A stretch of DNA of 63,781 nt, counting the filler, from Octopus bimaculoides (Eukaryota): NCBI RefSeq assembly GCF_001194135.2. It is 5 parts of 5 records of this genome, joined end to end, with 100 filler letters (N's around TTAATTAATTAA, not from the genome) between each part and the next. Parts side by side here need not be neighbours in the genome. Positions count along the whole stretch, not along the records: positions 41,542 to 55,817 come from NC_068996.1; 4 more parts are not named here. The stretch is one strand, 5' to 3'. Of this stretch, positions 42,341 through 56,038 are shown piece after piece (positions within the stretch are counted from its first letter, which is position 1; each line of letters begins with the position of its first letter). The position numbers and the translations under genes are program-made. The notes beneath the pieces were generated by a model. It did not search any database, was not told the origin of the DNA, and was given only the letters and a program-made list of their open reading frames with translations.

Positions 42341-43558
42341 TACCAAATAGGTGGCTGATCACAATTTACTCTCAATTAAAAGGAGAAAAACATATATACA
42401 TACATACATTCATCTTAGCTGCCCTCTTGTATATGGGCAAAGCCATCAGCAGAAAGAACCAATGAAATGAGTCTCTGTTGACACAATGCGAGGCCCCTGT
42501 ATGATTCCCTGGCGAAAGACCCACACATTCCACTGCACAATGCACAGTTGTTCCAGCTGGCAGAAAGAGCAGATACCATAGTATGAACACCCCCGACGTG
42601 ACCCTTCAATCCTCCAATCGAGCGGCACACCCCTCCACAGTCTGCACATGCTCCATTGTGAACAACATACATACATACATATATAAATATATATACATAC
42701 ACACATACATGCATATATAATTGTCTATAATTTATTTTTCAGAAAAAAAGCCCCCACCTCACCGAAAAGAAATTCCAAATCAAGACTAAAGTAATCAACT
42801 ATACATATAGGTGTATGTATACATTGTATCATCATTGTCATTTAATGTCTGTTTTCCATGCTGGCATAAACTGGGTAGATAGACACGTTGATGCATACAT
42901 ACATACATACATACATACATACATACATACATACATACGTACATACATACATATTTACAGGGGTAACTGGCTTGTGGCAGCCAAGCGTTCACAGTAATGT
43001 TGCTTTTTGATCTTTCGAAATCGGCCCTTCTTATAATTGGGAAACATGCTGGTAGCGTGCAAAAAGCACCCAGAAAACACCATTGAGTGGTTGGCATTAG
43101 GAAGGGAATTCAGCTATAGAAACCAAGCTCAAACAGACAATTGGAGTCTGACTAGCTCCATGTCAAACTGTCCAACCCATGCCAACTTGGAAAGTGGACA
43201 TTAAACGATGATGATGATGATGATGATAATAATGTGTGTGTGTGTGTGTGTGTTTATATATATATCTATAATATATATATGCATATATATATTATATATA
43301 ATATACTATATATATATGCATATAAACACACATACACATACATATACATATAAATATGTATGTGCATATATATATATACATGCATATGCATACATATATA
43401 TGTGCCTATATCATGAATGTATTATATATATATATATTATATGCACACAGACACACACACGCACACACACACACACATATAAATATAAATATATATATAT
43501 GAATGTATATGACTATAGTATATATATATCTATAATATATATATGCATNNNNNNNNNN

Positions 43559-43596
<38 letters not shown>

Positions 43597-45221
43597 GTTA
43601 TATTTTATGCATATATTCATATATGTATGTATATCTTATATATTACATAAAATTTTGATGAAGAAAATATGTACTGTATGACTTGATGTGAAATGAATGA
43701 ACTAACTGAAGCAAGACATATAGTAAGCAGTTTGAATGAAATGTAAACGAATGAGTTTTAAAAATCATCCAATGAATGTCTCTGGCAAAATATAGCAAAT
43801 CTCATACTTAAAAGAGATTTTGCTTTTTATTTTTATTTTTTTTTTGTTTTTTGAATGAGTGGAATTTGAATATGAACTGAGAAAAATCCATTAAAATTTC
43901 TTTAATTATTTAAAAAATTATATTGTAAGTATGTATATTTGTATGTCTTTGAGGTCTCCTGGAACTGATGAGGTTGATGTGCTTAAATGAAGTAATTACA
44001 TTTTTAAAAGGAAAAAGACTTGTGGCTGAGTCGTAAGTTGTTTGCTTCCCAACCAGATGCTTCTGTGTTCTGTCCCACTGCATGGCATCTTGGGCAGGTA
44101 TCTTCTACTATAGCCTTAGACTGATAAAAGCCTTGTGAGTGGATTAAGTAGATGGAAACTGAAAGAAGCCTGTCATTTTATATATGTATATATGTTGTAC
44201 ACATATGTGTATATCTATCTTTGTCCCCACCACTTGACAACTGGTGTTGATGTGTTTACATCACTACAACTTAGCAATTTGGCAAAAGAGACCAATAGAA
44301 TAAGTATCAGGCTTAAAACCAAATTCTTTAAGACGATGCCCCAGCATGGTCGCAGTCTAATGACTGAAACAAGTGAAAAGGAGGAGATAAAAGGTAAATT
44401 GGAGAGAGTGGATGAGAGAATAAAAGATGAGTGAAATGTTGTGAAAATGGGCTGAGTTGGAGGGAGGGGTCGGAAGCAGAGCTGTTGGGCCAAATTTAGA
44501 GAAATGAGTTCAGAAATGTACAAGTGTCATGAACATGGAGTTTAAAGGAAATTTTAAAAAAATGAATTTAGTTAAGGAGAGCAAACAAGCTGAAAAAAAA
44601 AGAAAAACAAATATACAAATAAATTTACTGGTGAGATTGAAGAATTATAAATGAATTAATAGAATAAGAAAATAAAGTGAGAAATGCTATGAAAGACTTG
44701 TTTTTTTTTTTTTTTTGGTAACATCAATAGAAATATAGCAACTGATAGAAGACATAAAAAACAGAAAATGTAAGTCTTGTTGAACAATTCAGAAAAACAA
44801 TGAATTATGTGAGTGTATATATATAAATTATATGTATATATTATCGACTGCACATACTCAATGTATGTGTATTGTTTATTTGTTGGTTTGGTGTGATATA
44901 GCACCTGGGGGGGGGGGATTTCCTCATTATGCTGGGTGTTGTTAAAACACCCGAATATCATAGACAGATGAAACAACTCATCTCTGATTCCATTCATGGC
45001 TGATGGATTCCTATATTTCACCATTTTTGTGCCTTATCACCATCACTTGCTGGAATCAAGCCAGTAATGAATTGAATCACCTGTCCATGAGTATATATAA
45101 ATATATATATAGTGTAAAAAATCATTTGCTAATAAGTCGTGGGAGTGTTTACATAGGATTAAATTCAATAACTATTTATATATTTGATTTGTCTTTGATT
45201 ATATATATATCATCTTCATCA

Positions 45222-45943
45222 TCATCATCATCGTTTAACGTCCGCTTTCCATGCTAGCATGGGTTGGACGATTTGACTGAGGACTGGTGAAACCGGATGG
45301 CAACACCAGGCTCCAATCTAAATTTGGCAGTGTTTCTACAGCTGGATGCCCTTCCTAACGCCAACCACTCAGAGAGTGTAGTAGGTGCTTTTACGTGTCA
45401 CCTGCACGAAGGCCAGTCAGGCGATACTGGCAACGGCCACGCTCAAAATGGTGTCTTTTATGTGCCACCCGCACAAGAGCCAGTCCAGGGGCACTGGCAA
45501 CGATCTTACTTGGCTTGCCGGGTCTTCTCACGCATAGCACACTTCCAAAGGTCTCGGTCAGTAGTCATCGCCTCGGTGAGGCCCAATGTACGAAGGTCTT
45601 GCCTCACCACCTCAGCCCAGGTCTTCCTGGGCCNNNNNNNNNNCCCGCACAAGCCAGTCCAGGGGCACTGGCAACGATCTCGCTCGAAAATCCTACGGGA
45701 GCCAGTCAGGCGGTACTGGCAACGGCCACGCTCAAAATGGTGCATCTTATGTGCCACCCGCACAAGAGCCAGTCCAGGGGCACTGGCAACGATCTTACTT
45801 GGCTTGCCGGGTCTTCTCACGCATAGCACACTTCCAAAGGTCTCGGTCAGTAGTCATCGCCTCGGTGAGGCCCAATGTACGAAGGTCTTGCCTCACCACC
45901 TCAGCCCAGGTCTTCCTGGGCCTACCTCTTCCACGGGTTCCCT
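45222..45943 (-). mobile_element. Young RTE 3' end (internal duplication across a short gap)
   Basis: PRKTWAEVVRQDLRTLGLTEAMTTDRDLWKCAMREKTRQAK, 3' UTR repeats and (CAT)n tail. Confidence 0.85.
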
Positions 45944-46018
45944 CGAAAGTGAGTTTGAGTGCTCAACACTGCATTGGTGGATAGAAATTCATTATTTATG
46001 GGTAAACAAGTCTACCAA

Positions 46019-46127
46019 TGGTTTCATGTATAGAGATCTCTTTACAATTTTCAAGCCTGCCACATAGTTCTTGTCCCATGTAGCAGGCTTGAAAAATTAA
46101 ATAGAGACTCTTCTATACATGAAACCA
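46019..46127. repeat. Imperfect palindrome, ~47-50-bp arms
   Basis: TGGTTTCATGTATAGA...TTTTCAAGCCTGCCACAT / ATGTAGCAGGCTTGAAAA...TCTATACATGAAACCA. Confidence 0.8.
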
Positions 46128-46689
46128 CAACACCAGGATTTTCGTCTCAAGTCAAATATAGTATCTGTTGTTAGGATGTCTGCATACAAGCACTGCATCA
46201 TTTAAGTTGTAATAATGAAGTCAAACCAGATAGTAATATTTTGAAATCATTTTTTATACTACTTTAAAAGTTTACAAAATATATAATAGGAAATTCATCC
46301 TTTCTGTTGGAACTTCTTCAGTTAAAATATTTCAAAATGTATTTGATATGTTTTAACTGAGGACAGTCTTACATAATAGATGCCTTTCCTATTACATATT
46401 ATGCAAACCTGAAATGTGCATCTTAAATTATTTCAAAATATCACTGTCTGGTTTGATTTTATGATTACAAACATATTTTAAGCAAACTCATACTAAGAAT
46501 AATCAATGAGGATATTAGAGGGCTTCCAATCTCTCCTTATGACATAGTACAAATGAAGTGATTTCATACTTTAGAACCAACCATTGTAGAAGCAGGGCAA
46601 GGTTCACTCAATTCAATATAGTTGATTTCTATCCATCTATATCTAGAAGGTTAAGACATTTGCATTTGATAGAGGCTTCACTGATATTA

Positions 46690-47400
46690 GCAACAGAGAT
46701 ATTGATGTAATTATGCATGCTAGGAAAATGCTGCTGTTTAATAAAGGTTCAATCTGGATCAAACAAACTGAGCTAGTGGGCTCCTTTGATGTGACAATGG
46801 GAGCTTATGACAGCACAGATATCTGTGACCTTTTAGGACTGTATATAGTAGACACCTTAAAGAAGAGGTTCCCATCAGTCTTCTTTGGTCTATACAGAGA
46901 TGACGCTTTGGCTATCTCCAGGGGAACTAATGGAATACCCAAGATAGGCTTAAGAAGGACCTCATTAGCACCCTTAGCTCCATAGGACTCAAGATTACAA
47001 TCAAAACCAACAAACATTTAAATGCCATGTTGGACCTGTGCTCCTGTTCATACAGAACCTGCAGCAAACAAAACAAAAGACTGTCCTATATCAATATAAT
47101 CTCCTGCCGCCCACCTATTGTGTTCAGCCAGAGAATTTCGAATCTTTCTTCTAATCAAGAAATTTTCGATGCCTCAGTCCCCTATTACAATAAGGCTCTG
47201 GTATCCAGTAGGTTTAAGGACCACATCTCCTTTGTGCCATGCCCTAGCATCAGCAAAAGCAAGTTCCACTGTAAAGTCGTTTGGTTTGCCCCACCCTTCT
47301 CACTCAATGTCAAGACTTACATGGGAAAAATATTCCTTAGATTGGCGGACAAAGACTCCACATAGTCACACATGCCATACTTGATTAAATGGAAGCTCCT
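46690..47400 (+). mobile_element. Penelope-like element RT fragment (degenerate)
   Basis: FDVTMGAYDSTDICDLLGLYI...FGLYRDDAL and LSYINI..PP..RISNLSSNQEIFDASVPYYNKAL motifs typical of PLE reverse transcriptases; frameshifted. Confidence 0.75.
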
Positions 47401-47826: not shown

Positions 47827-50800
47827 TTAACGTCTGTTGTCCATGCTGGCATGGGTAGGACAGTTTGACCAGGGCTGGCAAGCTGGAAGGCTGCACCAGA
47901 CCCCAGTCTGATTTAGCATGGTTTTCTATGGCTGGATGCCCTTCTTAACACCAATCGCTCTGAGAGTGTAACGGGTGCTTTTACTTGCCACTGGCATTGA
48001 TGCCATTGGTGTGACACCAATATTTTCCACAACTGCAATTTTGCTTGGCTAGATGAGTCTTCTCAAGCATGACATAATGCCAAAGGTCTCGGTCATTGTC
48101 TCTGTGAGGCTCAAAGTTCAAAGATCATGTTTCACCATTTTGACCCATGTCTTCCTGGCTCTACTTCTACCACAGGTTCCCTCCACAGTTGGAGATCAGC
48201 ACTTCTTTACACAATTATCCTCGTCCATATGCATCACATGACCAGACCAGCACAATTGTCTCTTGTACATCACACACAACGCCTTTAATGCCCAACTTTT
48301 CTCTCAAGATGCTTTCACTGTCAAACATGCACATTGATGCAGCACATCCAGCGAAGCATACTGGCTTCATTTCTTTCAAGCCTACGCATGTCCTCGGCTG
48401 TCACAGCCCTTGTTCCACTTCCATGCAGCATAGCTTTTTGCACAAAGGCATCATACAATCTGCTTTCACTCTGAGAGAGAGAGGCCCTTTGTTGCCAGTA
48501 GAGGTAGGAGCTCTCTGAACTTTGCCCAGCCTAATCTTATTCTCACAGCTATACTCTTGGAGCATCCACCTCCACTACTAACTTGGTCACCTAGATAACA
48601 AAAGCTATCTTCTACCTCTAGCTTGTTCCCCCCCACCTCCATGGCAGTTGATGGAGTCTATTTTCTGCACATTTTCAGCATTTATTTATTATACCTGTGC
48701 ATCTTCCACATACAAAAACTATTTTCCCAGTTAACCTTCCTCCGATATTGCTGCACCTTTTATGTGTCCAAATCTTACTCTGGCTGCATCTTACAGAGCA
48801 CCTTTTCTACAGACTGAGCAGGGCTATGTATCTGAAGGGATTTGTGATTTGTATGCCATCCTACTTACAAAGACTTTGGTTTTTACTAGATTGACTCTAA
48901 GGCCCTTTGATTCTAGACCTTGCTTCCATACCTGGAACTTCTCTTCTCTAGTTCTGGTAGTGATTCAGCTATAAAAGCAAGGTCATCAGTGTAGAGAAGC
49001 CCCCAAGAGCAGCCTGTCTTGAATTCCTCTATTATTGCCTGGAGGATTATGATGAAAAGAGGGGGCTGAGCACCAATCCTTGGTGAACCCCTACTCATAT
49101 CCTGAATTCTTCGCTGTACTTATTACCAACCCTCACCTTACTGGTAGCATCCCTGTACATAGATTGTACAGCTCTCTCCAACCACTCATCTATCCCTAGT
49201 TTCTGCATTGACCACCAGATAAGGGATCAGGGGACCCTGTCAAAGGCTTTCCCCATTCCAACAAAGGCCAAGCACAGAGGTTTGTTTTTGGCCAGGAATT
49301 TCTCCTGCAGCTGTCTTACAAGAAATATAGCATCAGTGGTTATTCTCCCTGGCACAAAACCAAACTGCATCTCATCTAAACTAACTCTCTCCCTAATTAG
49401 TTGGGCTATGAGTCTCTGCAACTTTTATCACCTGATCCCAAAATTTGATACCTCTGTACTTATTTTCAAGACATCATCTTTACCTTCGTAGCAGTTCACT
49501 ATAGTGTTGTTACACCAGTCACTGGGTATGACTCCTTCATGAACCACCTGATTTACAATACAGGTGACTAAACCCAAACCCACACCATCAAATATTTTAA
49601 GCATCTCAGCAGTGATTCTTGATGGGTTAGGGACTTTCCCAGTCTTTATATCGTTAATTGCTTTATTTACCAAGGTGATGTTGATTCAGTTGGGTCAACA
49701 TTTGGTAGACTCTCTTTCTCCCATTCATTCTCCATGTTCAGTAGTTTTTCATTATGGCATTTCCAATCCTTTTTCTTGGCAGAATCATTAAATGCAAGGG
49801 CACCATCATCCATGCAGACACATTTCTCTCCCATGACATCACAATTTTCTCCCACTGTCTTGTTATCCAAAACATTTCAGTTCTTTGGTCCTCACATTGC
49901 TGAATATTGGCAAACTTCTTCTTTTCTGCTTCTCCTTTAGCTATATATACCTATCTCCTAGCTTCCCTTCTGGCAGTCTGATACAGATCCCTAATACCCC
50001 CACTCTTCCAGGCCTTCCAGGCTGGTTTCTTGGCTCTAATAGCCCAGTCTACAGCATCATTCCACCTAGGCCTGGATGGGTCTATGCATCAGCTGCACTT
50101 TTGGTCTGTGGCACTCAGCAGGCTGTCCTGCAGGAATTCTTAGTTTCCCTCTATGTCACAAGTCAGTAGATCCTCCTCCCTCCCTATCATCAAATTTCTC
50201 AATTAGGATATCTCAAAATCTCTGACCACATGAAGAGTCTTTAAACTTCTAAATCCTTCTTTTCCAGATTGGTCTGTTTCTTGGCAACCTTCTGGCTTGG
50301 AGTCTAAAGTCACTAATGATTAGTCTATGCTGGAGGTGGAGTACATTCTTTACCAGGGAGGGTCTTTGTATTTAAGAGCAACCATGCATCCCACTGTCTT
50401 GTGGGAATGAAATCGATCTGGCTAGCAGAGACCCCTGATTGATAGGTTATCAGGTGACTAACTGGCTTCCTGAAGTTGGTGTTGCAGATCAATAAGTTAT
50501 TTTCATCACAGAACTTCAGTAGCCTTGTTCCCTCTTTGTTTTGAGGACCAATTCCATAGCTCCATGGACACCATGGAAGATACCAGACTGCCGTCCGACA
50601 TGCTTATTGAAATCCTCAGCCATGAAGATGAGATCATTGTCAATCGTCTTTGAGGTTGCCTGCAGAAAAATATCATAAAAGTGGTCCTTCTGTTCATTTG
50701 GTAGGCCCACTTGTGGAGCATAAGCAGATATAATTGTTGCTAAACTATTCTGCAAGACTAGCCTGACCTTAAGCACTTTATCGCACACCATCACTACCTC

Positions 50801-51110
50801 TATGACCTTATCAACCCATTTCTCTGCAAGAAGTAGGCCCAGATCACCCACATTGTCACTGTTACCTTCCCAGAAAAATTTATACCTATGTGTCTTGTTT
50901 GTGAGGAACCTGGCTGAAGCTCCTGTCCACCTTACCTCTTGGATGCTGCATACATCGACATGCCTCCGTTCAAGCATCTTAACAATCTCACTAGACCTAC
51001 CTTTGAATGCGCCTACATTGACAGTGTCAACTCTGAAAACTGGGAAAGGGACATGGGAGGAAACACGGGAAGGAGTGATGGAATTTGGCACCTGAAAAGA
51101 AGGTTTCAGT
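47790..51110 (-). mobile_element. Near full-length but dead RTE LINE
   Basis: APE endonuclease (TVNVGAF...DVCSIQEVRW...IISAYAPQ...EDFNKHVG), RT (QFGFVPGRITTDAIFLVRQLQEK; LLYTDDL), 3' UTR with (GAT)n; multiple frameshifts. Confidence 0.92.
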
Positions 51111-51395
51111 GATTGCTTGATAACAGACATGCCACATCAGTTGTTCTCCTACAACCTACCATCATTCAAACATAGTAAAATTGATGCCCCTACTGGGGCA
51201 TACATACATACATATATATATGTATGTGTGTGTGTGTGTATGTGTATTTATATGCACATACATATATACATACATACATACATACATACATACGTATATA
51301 AAATGTAATTTTTGTATAATTATGTATTGTTAATATAACAATACATAAAGACGGGCTAGAGTTGAAGTGCTCAGCATGAGCTAAAATTCATCTTA

Positions 51396-51544
51396 TAGTA
51401 AAAATGGATACATAAGGGTGGAAAACCACAGGAATAATACCATATGTCCAACGCAAGATATAATTGAACACACATATTATATCTTGCGTTGGACATATGG
51501 TATTATTCCTGTGGTTTTCCACCCTTATGTATCCATTTTTACTA
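51396..51544. repeat. Perfect palindrome, 69-bp arms, 11-nt spacer
   Basis: Arms 51396-51464 and 51476-51544 are reverse complements; TA at both ends. Confidence 0.9.
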
Positions 51545-51559
51545 CATACGTATATATGT

Positions 51560-52600
51560 ATAAATCATCATCATCATTTAACATCCACTTTCCATGCTGG
51601 CATGGGTTGAACGATTTGATTGAGGACTGGTGAGCCAGATGGCTGCACCAGGCTCCAGTCTGATCTGGCAGAGTCTCTACAGATTGGATGCCCTTCCTAA
51701 CACAAACCACTCCAAGAGTGTAATGGGTGCTTTTACTGGTACAAGGGCCAGTCAGGCAGTACTGGCAATGGCCACACTCAGATGGTGTTTTTTATGTGCC
51801 ACCTGCTCAGGAGCCAGTCCAGCGGCACTGACAACGACCTCGCACGAATGATTTTTCACATGCCACCGGCACAAGTACCAGTGAGGCGACGCTAGTAACG
51901 ATCATACTCAAATGGTGCTTTTTACGTACCGCCGGCACGGAAGCCAGACAGCTGCTCTGGCAATGATCACACTAGGATGGTGCTGTTAGTGCTCCACTGG
52001 CACTGGTGCCAGTCATTGAATTTGGTTCGATTTCAATTTCACTTGCCCCAACAGGTCTTCGCAAGCAGAGTTTAGTGTCCAATGAAATAAAGATCCAGAT
52101 AAGTGAGCTGGCTACACTTCTGGCAGAGGCCACAGATTATGCTCTCACTTGGCTTGCCGGGTCTTCTCACGTACTGCATATTTCCAAAGGTCCCGGTCAC
52201 TAGTCATTGCCTTGGTGAGGCCTAAAGTTTGAAGGTCGTGCTTCACCACCTCGTCCCATGTCTTCCTGGGTCTACCTCTTCCACAGGTTCCCTCAACTTC
52301 TAGGGTGTGGCACTTTTTCACACAGCTATCCTCGTCCATTCTCACCACATGACCATACCAGCACAATCATCTCTCTTGCACACCACAACTGATGCTTCTT
52401 ATGTCTAATTTTTCTCTCAAGGCACTTACACTCTGTCGAGTATGCACACTGACATTACACATCCATCAGAGCATACTGGCTTCGTTTCTTGCGAGCTTAC
52501 ACATGTCCTCAGCAATCATGGCCCATGTTTCACTGCCATGTAGCATGGCTGTTCGTACACATGTGTCATACAGTCTACCTTGGTATGTTGAACCACTGAA
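51560..52600 (-). mobile_element. RTE LINE 3' fragment
   Basis: WYGHVVRMDEDSCVKKCHTLEVEGTCGRGRPRKTWDEVV plus 3' UTR. Confidence 0.85.
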
Positions 52601-52938: not shown

Positions 52939-53310
52939 ATATATCAATTAGAAAATGGAGGATAATATGCTGAACCCAACGACTTGCAGACAGTGTATCC
53001 CATTGAATTTATTAACTTAATTCATAACTAAAGTGACAAAAAAACCCCACAAAGTACAGGTGTTTATGACAAACCATGTTATATTGACAACCGGGTTTAT
53101 AAATAAAAGTACATAAGGAATTAGAGAATGAACATATTCTTATGTACTTTTATTTGTAAACCCAGTTGTCAATATAACATGGTTTGTCATAAACACCTGT
53201 ACTTTGTGGTTTTTTTTGTCACTTTAGTTATGAATTAAGTTAATGAATTCAACGGGATACACTGACTGGAAGTCGTTGGGTTCAGCATATTATCCTCCAT
53301 TTTCTAATTG

Positions 53311-53315
<5 letters not shown>
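52939..53315. repeat. Foldback inverted repeat, ~180-bp arms
   Basis: Arms ~52939-53119 and ~53137-53315 with scattered mismatches; the right arm runs into (TA)n. Confidence 0.9.
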
Positions 53316-53348
<33 letters not shown>

Positions 53349-53493
53349 ATTTATGTATGCATATATATCTATATATATTTATGTATGTGTGTATATATAT
53401 GTATATANNNNNNNNNNATATATTCATATATATGTATTGTATATTTGTGTGTGTGTGTATATGTATGTATATATACATGTATATGTGTGTGTA

Positions 53494-53541
<48 letters not shown>

Positions 53542-55194
53542 TGGATGTATATGTATATATATTGTAGCAATTAATATATATTTTACACATATAATTAAAT
53601 GGAAAAAGGGATAAAAAAGATATCCTGGCAGATATAAATAAAGCATTCAGTATTAAAAGAATTTGGTTAAATGTTCAGCAATCAGATACCAATAAATGTA
53701 ATTAGAATACATAACCCAGGTAAATCCTCATGCATGACAGGTAAATCCAAATATCCTTTGGCAAGATTTTGAGAAATTTAGAGTATTTAATTTAAAAAAA
53801 ATGCGTATAGAGAAAATTATATCTTTATTATAGATTTCACCTTATAAAGCCCACAATTGTTTCTACTGAATATATATATAAAATATCATTAACTTTAATA
53901 TCATTAAGATTAATATTTCTGAAGATGTATACTAACACAATGTTATCAAGGTGATCCAAAATTAGTGAAATTCAAATTGAACATATGGAATATTGCCAGT
54001 ACACAAGTGTCTACAAAAAGAACACATAGAGGGATTTTAATCTACGACATTGCTGTACTCATCTAATTAGTGGGTAATGAAATGATAAAAAACAACTGTA
54101 AAAAATTCTACATTACAACAATTAGAAACAGAAAAATATAATCTAAAAAAGGCTATTTTTGTATTCAATTATTGGTGACGTCACTGGATAACTATAGAAT
54201 AAAAAATAAACATAAGAATTCTACACTATGGTTATTAGAAACAGAGATATTATGTCACAGCAATTAGTTATCAATTTATTAAATGTAGTAAAAATTTTAG
54301 AAGAATTAACCTTATTATATAATATATGAAAAGCTATTATAATTAAGAATTTCTACTAGTTCTCCTCTTAGAACTAGGCATTACAGTGGGATTATTATTA
54401 TTACAATTAATGTTAAAGCTAAGTGATAACCTAAGTGTAATTACTTAGAAAATCAAAACCTTCAGAAAGATTATCATTAGAGTTAATTTCACAGTATTTC
54501 ACTATTCTATTCCTGTTTATAGAGTGAGATATTCCCTAATTCTCTGTTTATTGTATGCTACTATAATCCCAGCTAAATTTCTGGCTGAGATTATAGCAGG
54601 GGTTTATTCTAGTGTTTTCTAGTGGTTGAATATGAAAACTTTATACTATGGCGATAAAACAATTTCCCATATTTACTTGAAGGTGCACTAGATAAGTATT
54701 TTCCATATTCAAGTAAATATGGGAAATTATTTAATCACCATACATACATACATACACACATACATACATACATACATGCATACATACATACACGTATATA
54801 TACCAACAATTGAGAGCAGTTGCCATATTTCATTCCATAATGACTATCTCTGAAGAGCACAGGGTTAGATAATTGGACTGTTATCTAACACTCTGTTGAA
54901 CCCCCACTGCAAAACTGATTGATAAGATCAGCTGGAATGGATTAATAACACTGTACATTTCAATTAATATATATTAGAAATAATACATTTCTAAATCTCT
55001 CAGAGAGACTTAAGCAGTAGTGGTGCGATAAAGTAGTTGTATACTGCCAACTTAACGTGACAGTCCCAATAAGGGAATATACTACTGCTATTTAGCCCTA
55101 GGAAGCTGGACCGCTTCCTGTCGGCCTTGACACATTTCCTGTACCCTTATCCTTACAAGGGGGAGACAAACTCCTGCACCCAGCCCAGCCTGCA

Positions 55195-55237
55195 TTCAGG
55201 GACATGTTTCTGAGTCTTTGCTCGTCATCAGCCTGAA
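55195..55237 (-). ncRNA. Minimal type I hammerhead ribozyme (family A, copy 1)
   Basis: UUCAGG-CUGAUGA-CGAGCAAAGACUCA-GAAA-CAUGUC^CCUGAA: 6-bp stem I, GAG/CUC stem II with a C.A mismatch at the base, palindromic ACAUGU stem III, GUC cleavage triplet. Confidence 0.78.
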
Positions 55238-55546
55238 GTAGCATGGCGGGCTAGCTGAAGAAATCTGTCTCAGCTTCGTAAGGATATACTATTTCAGTGA
55301 GATACTATCCACTGGTAACAAAAATTAGAAATAATGAATTTCTAAATCTCTCAGAGAGACTTAAACAGTAGTGATGCGATAAAGTTGTTGTATACTGCCA
55401 ACTTAACGTGACAGTCCCAATAAGGGAATATACTACTGCTGTTTAGCCCTAGGAAGCCAGACGGCTTCCTATTAGGTCTTGACACACTTTCTGTGCCCTT
55501 ATCCATACAAAGGGGAGACAAACTCCTCCAGCCAGCCCAGCCTGCA

Positions 55547-55587
55547 TTCAGGGACATGTTTCTGAGTCTTTGCTCGTCATCAGCTTG
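55547..55587 (-). ncRNA. Minimal type I hammerhead ribozyme (family A, copy 2)
   Basis: Same core as copy 1, 352 nt away. The 5' strand of stem I reads CAAG (one A.C mismatch) and is truncated at the inversion junction. Confidence 0.62.
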
Positions 55588-55597
55588 GTTGTGCTAC

Positions 55598-55640
55598 ATC
55601 AAGCTGATGACGAGCAAAGACTCAGAAACATGTCCCTGAA
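55598..55640 (+). ncRNA. Minimal type I hammerhead ribozyme (family A, copy 3, inverted)
   Basis: UCAAG-CUGAUGA-CGAGCAAAGACUCA-GAAA-CAUGUC^CCUGAA on the plus strand; mirror image of copy 2. Confidence 0.62.
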
Positions 55641-56038
55641 TGCAGGCTAGGCTGGGTGGAGGAGTTTGTCTCCCCCTCGTAAGGATAAGGGCACAGGAAA
55701 TGTATCAAGGCCTAATAGGAAGCGGTCTGGCTTCCTAGGGCTAAATAGCAGTAGTATATTCCCTTATTGGGACTGTCACGTTAAGTTGGCAGTATACAAC
55801 TACTTTATATATATATANNNNNNNNNNNNNNNNNNNNNNNNNNNNNNNNNNNNNNNNNNNNTTAATTAATTAANNNNNNNNNNNNNNNNNNNNNNNNNNN
55901 NNNNNNNNNNNNNNNNNGTACATACATAATTACATAATACATATATATATATATGTATGTATACATGCATGTTGATATGTATATATATACGTGTGTGTGC
56001 AGGTGTCTAGTTTAAGCATGTGATATGTGTGTGTGCGC

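What the first reader, a model, noticed from the sequence alone, without database searches (positions are those of the whole stretch)
54973..55640. Retrozyme-like array: 352-nt tandem unit delimited by minimal hammerhead ribozymes
Seen: two direct repeats with period 351-352 nt, each with a type I hammerhead on the minus strand (CUGAUGA...GAAA, palindromic ACAUGU stem III, GUC cleavage site). Known: metazoan non-LTR retrozymes are tandem monomers of a few hundred nt whose minimal type I hammerheads self-cleave, often as dimers through the palindromic stem III, to give circular RNAs. Penelope pseudo-LTRs carry the same ribozyme type. Inferred: a minus-strand transcript would be cut after 55553 and 55201, releasing a 352-nt non-coding monomer (55201-55552) able to circularise. 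I know of no description of this family, but could not search. Caveats: C.A mismatch at the base of stem II in all copies, and an A.C mismatch in stem I of copy 2.
Basis: partly seen in the sequence, partly recalled or inferred. Interest (0 to 1): 0.9.

Follow-up and report, generated by a model that had tools for sequence, protein, structure and literature searches.

The report
Hammerhead-ribozyme retroelement remnant in octopus DNA
This is a real but partly broken copy of a small non-coding mobile element carrying self-cutting hammerhead RNA motifs, of a kind already known from many animals, here in an octopus-like genome; it is a new example, not a new kind of thing.

Summary
A 351/352-nt direct repeat (92% identity) carries the same hammerhead-like motif on the minus strand, with C17 at 55201 and 55553.

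All core nucleotides are present. The architecture matches the axolotl retrozyme ribozyme HHR_Amex1: 6-bp helix I, 4-position helix II with a 6-nt loop, and helix III of A-U plus a palindromic CAUG.

The 352-nt monomer is non-coding, 43% GC, and folds far better than shuffles (z = -10).

The layout (tandem, inverted 5'-truncated copy, TA-rich ends) matches published Penelope-like element (PLE) insertions. The host is an octopod, and octopus genomes carry PLEs.

Best reading: an integrated cDNA of a PLE-mobilised non-LTR retrozyme.

Limits:
- Only copy 1 has an intact helix I.
- All copies have C.A in place of G10.1-C11.1.
- No Rfam hammerhead model matches.
- Copy 2's ribozyme is cut by the inversion junction.
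- A read-through transcript would bury one ribozyme in a >200-bp duplex.
- No other family copy was found in the little octopus sequence I could reach.

This locus is probably dead. It is a new member of a known kind, of modest interest.

The parts
54965..55200 (-). 3'-terminal partial unit of the array. It runs from the cleavage site of ribozyme 1 to the left end of the insertion, 236 nt. The end abuts TAATATATAT.
   Evidence: Homology with copy 2 starts at 54965 (D1). The boundary is uncertain within 54965-54974.
55195..55237 (-). Hammerhead 1, the only structurally complete one. Helix I 55232-55237/55195-55200 (6 bp); core CUGAUGA 55225-55231; helix II plus loop 55211-55224 (C.A, then GAG/CUC, loop CAAAGA); GAAA 55207-55210; palindromic CAUG 55203-55206; U16.1 55202; C17 55201.
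   Evidence: Full-length match to model R1, built from four cleaving retrozyme hammerheads: 20.9 bits, E=2.5e-4, one non-standard pair. It is the only hit of my relaxed descriptor.
55201..55552 (-). The 352-nt unit between the two predicted cleavage sites. It is non-coding, 43% GC, and predicted to form a rod-like, highly paired circle.
   Evidence: Circular MFE -137.2 kcal/mol against -88.2 +/- 4.9 for dinucleotide shuffles, z = -10. GC 0.432. The longest ORF is 68 aa with no relatives.
55238..55324 (-). Single-copy segment upstream of hammerhead 1. It pairs with the first ~45-55 nt after a cleavage site and so extends helix I into a long helix.
   Evidence: Inverted repeat I4. Duplex energies of -60 to -67 kcal/mol with each of the three arms. 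Circular fold.
55553..55587 (-). Hammerhead 2. Core, helix II and helix III are identical to hammerhead 1 (C17 = 55553). The 5' strand of helix I is reduced to CAAG and then runs into the inversion junction.
   Evidence: R1 gives only a local match without helix I: 13.6 bits, E=0.034.
55588..55599 (.). Centre of the palindrome: the head-to-head junction between copy 2 and the inverted copy 3.
   Evidence: I1: arms 55379-55587 and 55600-55808, 12 nt between them.
55598..55640 (+). Hammerhead 3, on the + strand (C3 55604, C17 55634). Helix I has 4 of 6 pairs, with A.C and A.A mismatches.
   Evidence: R1: 14.1 bits, E=0.024.
55600..55808 (+). Inverted, 5'-truncated third copy of the unit. It is 94-95% identical to copies 1 and 2. 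It ends at CTTTAT and is followed by TATATATA and the edge of the piece.
   Evidence: I1, I2, I3.
55809..55817 (.). (TA)n flank at the right end. It is cut by the edge of the piece, so no target-site duplication can be judged.

Best explanation
This is the integrated DNA copy of a small, non-coding, hammerhead-bearing retroelement of the metazoan non-LTR retrozyme type. Such elements are non-autonomous derivatives of Penelope-like elements (PLEs). The host is an octopod genome.

Inferred life cycle, following the published model. A multimeric transcript of a master array is cut by its type I hammerheads. Their helix III is only A-U plus a palindromic CAUG, so they should act in pairs through a 6-bp ACAUGU/ACAUGU helix, as in newt and axolotl. 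The 352-nt monomer, with 5'-OH and 2',3'-cyclic phosphate ends, is closed by a tRNA ligase of the RtcB type into a rod-like circle. A PLE reverse transcriptase / GIY-YIG endonuclease copies the circular or multimeric RNA into an AT-rich (TA)n target.

Shown at this locus. One cDNA arm of 1.77 units reads through two cleavage sites, so the template was uncleaved, circular or multimeric. A second, inverted, 5'-truncated arm meets it head-to-head. This is the published PLE insertion signature.

Inferred about this copy. It is probably inactive. The units differ by 5-8%. Hammerhead 2 has lost half of helix I. A read-through transcript would fold into a long hairpin that hides one ribozyme.
For: - All hammerhead core positions are present in three copies.
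- A covariance model built from four experimentally cleaving retrozyme hammerheads ranks the three motifs as the top three hits of the piece. Copy 1 matches full-length at 20.9 bits, E=2.5e-4.
- The architecture matches the axolotl Ax330 ribozyme position by position.
- My descriptor gives a chance rate of 3e-4 per piece.
- The unit has 351/352-nt periodicity, no coding capacity and 43% GC.
- The circle folds at -137 kcal/mol, z = -10. This matches the 'stable and highly self-paired' retrozyme circles of PMC7229834.
- The partial tandem plus an adjacent inverted 5'-truncated copy and a (TA)n bias is the PLE insertion pattern described in PMC8557442.
- The host is an octopod. Octopus genomes carry Penelope-like elements (PMC13282606), and a PLE-like RT pseudogene lies 8 kb away.
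- The 40-column hammerhead block is invariant among copies, while 20 of 208 columns vary (P = 0.011).
- There is a precedent for a mismatch at the base of helix II in an active retrozyme ribozyme: U.U in HHR_Amex2.
Against: - No Rfam hammerhead model matches at E<=10.
- The G10.1-C11.1 pair, called highly conserved even in PLE minimal hammerheads (PMC4209133), is replaced by C.A in all copies.
- Only one of the three ribozymes has a usable helix I.
- A ~20-bit score with my model is not decisive on its own. A 20-bit false positive lacking GAAA turned up in 192 kb of octopus DNA.
- The three copies are local relatives, so their agreement is not independent evidence.
- The right flank is cut by the edge of the piece, so no target-site duplication can be seen.
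Confidence: 0.7

Rival explanations
1. Ordinary PLE debris. On this reading the 352-nt unit is just the pseudo-LTR or 3' end of an autonomous Penelope-like element. The local tandem-plus-inverted structure would be the usual by-product of a heavily 5'-truncated PLE insertion, and no independent non-autonomous family would exist.
For: PLE insertions are typically 5'-truncated, partly tandem, and preceded by an inverted 5'-truncated copy (PMC8557442). Hammerheads sit in pseudo-LTRs (PMC4209133). In Xenopus, retrozyme consensus sequences are sister to pseudo-LTRs.
Against: The sequence is continuous through both cleavage sites with a 352-nt period. That requires a 352-nt repeating template, not a ~3-kb one. 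No RT/GIY-YIG ORF adjoins the array: the nearest PLE-like pseudogene is 8 kb away, and the array's minus-strand downstream side is microsatellite. The ribozyme has canonical retrozyme-like helix sizes, not the long helix II and short helix I of PLE minimal hammerheads.
Confidence: 0.15
2. On this reading the locus is an active retrozyme dimer whose minus-strand transcript is cut at 55553 and 55201, releasing a 352-nt RNA that circularises.
For: There are two ribozyme cores exactly 352 nt apart on one strand, with a palindromic helix III suited to dimeric action. The excised unit folds very stably.
Against: Hammerhead 2 lacks the 5' strand of helix I. The published working criterion of two consecutive complete hammerheads is not met. 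The upstream antisense copy makes a >200-bp duplex with one ribozyme-bearing copy. The C.A pair is at 10.1/11.1. The units have diverged by 5-8%.
Confidence: 0.1
3. Coincidence. On this reading an ordinary satellite or foldback repeat happens to contain a hammerhead-like string, and the locus matters, if at all, only as a hairpin-RNA source.
For: No Rfam hammerhead hit; the only Rfam matches are sub-threshold hairpin-microRNA models on the palindrome. There is a non-standard pair in helix II. The three copies are not independent.
Against: All 13 core positions plus three helices in the right order occur about 3e-4 times per piece by chance. The motif matches an experimentally active axolotl ribozyme helix by helix. 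The unit size, composition, fold and insertion architecture all independently fit the retrozyme/PLE picture.
Confidence: 0.05

Closest known systems
Metazoan non-LTR retrozymes (Cervera & de la Pena 2020, PMC7229834), especially the axolotl/newt ~330-nt repeat with HHR_Amex1
   Same: Tandem non-coding unit within the 170-400-nt size range, GC below 50%, and a highly self-paired predicted circle. The type I hammerhead has a 6-bp helix I, a 4-position helix II, a 6-nt loop 2 (CAAAGA here, CAAAAA in Ax330) and an identical helix III (GAAACAUGUC). It is therefore expected to work as a dimer.
   Different: C.A replaces G10.1-C11.1. Helix I runs on into a ~45-bp helix with only a 1x1 mismatch where loop 1 would be. 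The host is a cephalopod. Only 1.77 units plus an inverted copy are present. No expression or cleavage data exist, and no sequence similarity of the unit body to the published constructs was seen.
Axolotl HHR_Amex2 (Rtz_353)
   Same: The unit is ~350 nt, and there is a non-standard pair at the base of helix II (U.U). It still cleaves: 22% per hour as a monomer and efficiently as a dimer.
   Different: The mismatch is a different type (C.A), and helix III is weaker here (one pair plus a tetraloop, against two pairs).
Minimal hammerheads in pseudo-LTRs of Penelope-like elements (Cervera & de la Pena 2014, PMC4209133)
   Same: A palindromic helix III suited to dimers, likely low intrinsic activity, and the tandem/inverted genomic context.
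   Different: [quoted passage not shown] They flank a ~3-kb RT/GIY-YIG ORF. Here helix sizes are canonical and there is no ORF.
Plant LTR retrozymes (PMC4918200)
   Same: Non-autonomous, hammerhead-processed elements that form circular RNA.
   Different: Plant elements carry type III hammerheads in true LTRs, have a primer binding site and polypurine tract, are 600-1000 nt long, and are mobilised by Ty3/Gypsy machinery.

Membership tests
Hammerhead ribozyme, type I | Conserved core: C3 U4 G5 A6 N7 G8 A9, G12 A13 A14, A15.1-U16.1, H17 | tested here: met
   CUGAUGA ... GAAA ... U C is present in all three copies.
Hammerhead ribozyme, type I | Three helices around the core, with helix I open-ended | tested here: inconclusive
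   Copy 1 has a 6-bp helix I, a 3-bp plus C.A helix II, and a helix III of A-U plus palindromic CAUG. Copy 3 has 4 of 6 helix I pairs. Copy 2 has no usable helix I.
Hammerhead ribozyme, type I | G10.1-C11.1 pair closing helix II next to the core | tested here: not met
   C.A in all copies. There is a partial precedent: U.U in the active HHR_Amex2.
Hammerhead ribozyme, type I | Match to a curated Rfam hammerhead covariance model | tested here: not met
   No hammerhead family was listed at E<=10 on the 14-kb piece or on 55140-55280.
Hammerhead ribozyme, type I | Site-specific self-cleavage after H17 | not testable with these tools
   This needs in vitro transcription of monomer and dimer constructs.
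Metazoan non-LTR retrozyme | Short (about 170-400 bp) head-to-tail repeat without LTR, primer binding site or polypurine tract | tested here: met
   Period 351/352 nt, 1.77 units.
Metazoan non-LTR retrozyme | Non-coding, GC below 50% | tested here: met
   The longest ORF is 68 aa with no relatives. GC is 43%.
Metazoan non-LTR retrozyme | The monomer is predicted to form a stable, highly self-paired circle | tested here: met
   -137.2 kcal/mol, z = -10, 66% of bases paired.
Metazoan non-LTR retrozyme | [quoted passage not shown] 2026) | tested here: not met
   Hammerhead 2 lacks the 5' strand of helix I.
Metazoan non-LTR retrozyme | Multi-copy family in the genome, co-existing with PLEs | tested here: inconclusive
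   No other copy was found in the other 13 kb of the piece or in 192 kb from three Octopus assemblies, which is far too small a sample. PLEs in octopus are documented in the literature, and a PLE-like pseudogene lies at 46519-47395.
Metazoan non-LTR retrozyme | Expressed as linear and circular RNA of unit length | not testable with these tools
   No transcriptome could be searched.
Autonomous Penelope-like element | RT plus GIY-YIG ORF between hammerhead-bearing direct repeats | tested here: not met
   Only 352 nt separate the ribozymes, and there is no RT/EN similarity in or next to the array.
PLE-type insertion architecture | Partial tandem with an adjacent inverted 5'-truncated copy, in an AT/(TA)n-rich target | tested here: met
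   compared with the description in PMC8557442. The target preference is only suggested, because the right flank is 9 nt long.

The most novel reading that the evidence does not exclude
This locus could be a relic of a cephalopod-specific retrozyme family whose hammerhead works with a C.A (possibly protonated wobble) pair in place of G10.1-C11.1. Octopus tissues would then hold abundant ~352-nt circular RNAs made this way. That would be the first retrozyme circRNAs shown in cephalopods, and a natural test of how much the 10.1/11.1 pair matters.
Probability: 0.15. Interest if true: 0.5.

Novelty: new member of a known kind. Interest (0 to 1): 0.3.

Why it matters
If the family proves to be multi-copy and expressed, it would extend ribozyme-made circular RNAs and PLE-dependent non-autonomous elements to cephalopods. 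It would also supply a natural hammerhead variant with a non-standard pair next to the catalytic core.

The locus is a compact textbook case of PLE-type integration: read-through of cleavage sites, tandem and inverted arms, and TA-rich ends. That bears on the still unresolved PLE transposition mechanism.

As it stands, it is one decayed copy of an already described kind of element. Its main practical value is for repeat annotation. The Rfam search here missed the hammerhead, and it reported the palindrome only as sub-threshold microRNA-like hits.

Tried and rejected
- **Rfam cmscan.** I ran it on the whole piece and on a 141-nt stretch. There was no hammerhead hit. The only matches were sub-threshold hairpin-microRNA models on the palindrome (MIR1882-like, 78 bits against a gathering score of 107), which I treat as spurious.
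- **Searches for other copies.**
  - The 68-aa pseudo-ORF against the 5.8-billion-protein collection found nothing.
  - Exact-pattern scans with the ribozyme (loop 2 left free) and with the invariant central block found nothing in metagenome, viral and prokaryotic genome collections. These collections are unlikely to contain octopus DNA.
  - blastn of the unit against the rest of the piece and 192 kb of Octopus sinensis, O. bimaculoides and O. vulgaris DNA found nothing.
  - I did not run the representative-protein HMMER search. The same collection had already returned no candidate.
- **Exact look-up of a window ORF** to recover the source contig: not on record.
- **Model R1 on the octopus loci.** One 20-bit hit (L002 8772-8811) lacks GAAA and is a false positive, driven by the ACCUCA/UGGGGU helix I shared by two seed sequences. 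I therefore do not rest the case on R1 scores alone.
- **Pfam.** It was silent on the RT-like pseudogene and its homologues. The PLE-like call rests on motifs read by eye.
- **Assembly-artefact reading of the palindrome.** Rejected. The arms differ by 5-6%, mostly by transitions, and the inverted copy is closer to the distal copy 1 than to the adjacent copy 2.
- **Supplement of PMC4209133**, sought for minimal-hammerhead sequences: not held.

Full report
**What is in the sequence.**
Positions 54965-55587 hold a direct repeat with 351/352-nt spacing. The blocks 54965-55119 / 55316-55470 and 55123-55235 / 55475-55587 are each 92% identical. Over 263 aligned columns identity is 92.4%. That makes 1.77 units, which Tandem Repeats Finder did not list.

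The string CTGATGA-CGAG-CAAAGA-CTCA-GAAA-CATG-TC occurs twice on the minus strand, with C3 at 55231 and 55583. It occurs once more on the plus strand, with C3 at 55604. C17 is therefore 55201, 55553 and 55634.

It is 94% complementary to 55379-55587, with a 12-nt centre at 55588-55599. The piece ends at 55817, after TATATATA.

**Is it a hammerhead?**
All conserved core positions are present in all three copies: C3-A9, G12-A14, A15.1/U16.1 and C17.

Copy 1 has a 6-bp helix I (UUCAGG/CCUGAA). Its helix II is GAG/CUC closed by C.A, with loop CAAAGA. Its helix III is a single A-U pair capped by the palindromic CAUG.

This is, position by position, the architecture of the axolotl retrozyme ribozyme in construct Ax330 (CUGAGGA-GGUC-CAAAAA-GGCC-GAAA-CAUG-UC). 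That sequence comes from the supplement of PMC7229834. The paper reports that this type cleaves poorly alone (6% in 1 h) but efficiently as a dimer.

I built a covariance model from the four cleaving retrozyme hammerheads of that supplement: coral, mussel and two axolotl. It ranks the three motifs as the three best hits in the 14-kb piece:
- Copy 1: full-length, 20.9 bits, E=2.5e-4, one non-standard pair.
- Copy 3: 14.1 bits.
- Copy 2: a local match only, 13.6 bits.

A descriptor of my own, written after seeing the motif and relaxed to allow the extra C and A flanking helix II, finds only copy 1. It hits once in 3000 simulated pieces.

Against this:
- No Rfam hammerhead model matches, even at E<=10 on a 141-nt stretch.
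- The G10.1-C11.1 pair is replaced by C.A. That pair is described as highly conserved even in PLE minimal hammerheads (PMC4209133).
- My model produced a 20-bit false positive lacking GAAA in 192 kb of octopus DNA. The score alone is therefore not proof.
- One partial precedent exists: HHR_Amex2 has a U.U mismatch at the base of helix II and still cleaves.

**The unit.**
The 352-nt piece is 43% GC. Its longest ORF is 68 aa and has no relatives.

As a circle it folds at -137.2 kcal/mol, against -88.2 +/- 4.9 for dinucleotide shuffles (z = -10). Helix I continues into a ~45-bp helix. This helix forms between the first nucleotides after the cleavage site and the single-copy segment 55238-55324. 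Such 'stable and highly self-paired' circles are the published hallmark of retrozyme RNAs.

Among the three copies, 20 of 208 shared columns vary. The 40-column ribozyme block is invariant (P = 0.011), and so is a 54-column central block (P = 0.036). This is mild evidence that divergence is not uniform. The copies are local relatives, so I do not lean on it.

**Architecture and origin.**
The minus-strand arm reads without interruption through both cleavage sites. It ends at an internal position of the unit (…TTTCTAAT|ATATAT, about 54965-54974). Its template was therefore a circular or multimeric, uncleaved RNA with a 352-nt period. It was not a 3-kb PLE RNA, and it was not a ribozyme-trimmed linear monomer.

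The inverted arm ends at a different internal position (…CTTTAT|ATATATATA, 55808). It meets copy 2 head-to-head just upstream of the ribozyme cores. It keeps about 13 nt upstream of CUGAUGA, and copy 2 keeps about 4 nt.

A partial tandem, an adjacent inverted 5'-truncated copy and a (TA)n target bias together form the pattern described for PLE insertions (PMC8557442).

The palindrome is not an assembly foldback. Its arms differ by 5-6%, mostly by transitions. The inverted copy is closer to the distal copy 1 (95.2%) than to the adjacent copy 2 (94.2%).

**Host and context.**
- The LINE endonuclease ORF at 50516-51130 (minus strand) is 61-80% identical to Octopus sinensis, O. bimaculoides and O. 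vulgaris proteins.
- The LINE aligns at 74-89% nucleotide identity to loci from all three assemblies. The piece is therefore octopod.
- Octopus genomes are reported to contain Penelope-like elements (PMC13282606).
- 235 Rfam Hammerhead_1 hits were listed for the giant squid (PMC6962438).
- I found no paper in the library that describes retrozymes in cephalopods.
- A frameshifted RT-like pseudogene lies at 46519-47395 (+). Its homologues carry a C-terminal CxC…C plus a GIY-YIG-like motif. It looks PLE-like by eye, but Pfam is silent on it.

**Will this locus make a circle?**
Probably not.
- Hammerhead 2 lacks the 5' strand of helix I. The working criterion of two consecutive complete hammerheads is therefore not met.
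- A read-through minus-strand transcript begins with the antisense third copy. It folds at -563.6 kcal/mol (z = -37), with a >200-bp duplex burying one ribozyme-bearing copy.
- No promoter is known.
- The units have diverged by 5-8%.

**Verdict.**
The retrozyme-like interpretation is right as to kind but too optimistic as to activity.

I could not find other copies of the family with the collections on hand. Copy number, consensus, covariation and linkage to PLE ORFs all remain open.

I rate it a new member of a known kind, with interest 0.3.

Noticed in passing
window 46519-47395 (+): A frameshifted RT-like pseudogene in three frames, with motifs FNIVDFYPSI, GLYRDD and WFAPPFS. Its homologues in the protein collection continue into a CxC...C motif and a GIY-YIG-like VVY...YVG segment, so it may be a Penelope-like element remnant. 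Pfam finds nothing in it or in its homologues.
   Followed up: partly
window ~48400-51130 (-): A LINE (non-LTR retrotransposon). Its endonuclease ORF is at 50516-51130, with reverse-transcriptase motifs downstream in several frames. It is 74-81% identical at the DNA level to copies in three Octopus assemblies. NCBI names the related proteins 'craniofacial development protein 2-like'.
   Followed up: partly
window 51425-51515: A near-perfect 91-nt hairpin just upstream of the LINE 5' end. It gives a sub-threshold mir-3912 Rfam match (68 bits against 95). A second hairpin lies at 53057-53199 (MIR9563-like, 57 bits against 90). They are probably foldback or MITE-like repeats rather than microRNAs.
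   Followed up: no
window 45506-45829 (-), 52145-52366 (-), 45297-46067 (+), 51630-51851 (+): Repeated LINE 3'-tail segments (...GRPRKTW...LGLT.AMT.DRDLWK...REKTRQAK on the minus strand) occur at least twice in the piece. The 45.3-46.1-kb copy is internally duplicated around a 10-N gap (45634-45643).
   Followed up: no
window 43255-43643, 53311-53529, 42894-42953, 54739-54803: Long (TA)n and (ACAT)n microsatellites, two of them interrupted by 10-N gaps (43549-43558, 53408-53417). The (CATA)n run at 54739-54803 lies 160 nt from the left end of the array.
   Followed up: no
window 54647-54742: A 35-nt inverted repeat, 91% complementary with a 26-nt spacer (54647-54681 / 54708-54742), directly left of the (CATA)n run. 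Its nature is unknown.
   Followed up: no
L002 8772-8811 (-) (Octopus bimaculoides CM046602.1): A 20-bit match to my hammerhead model that has ACCUCA/UGGGGU and CUGAAGA but no GAAA box. It is a false positive and shows the limits of a four-sequence model.
   Followed up: yes
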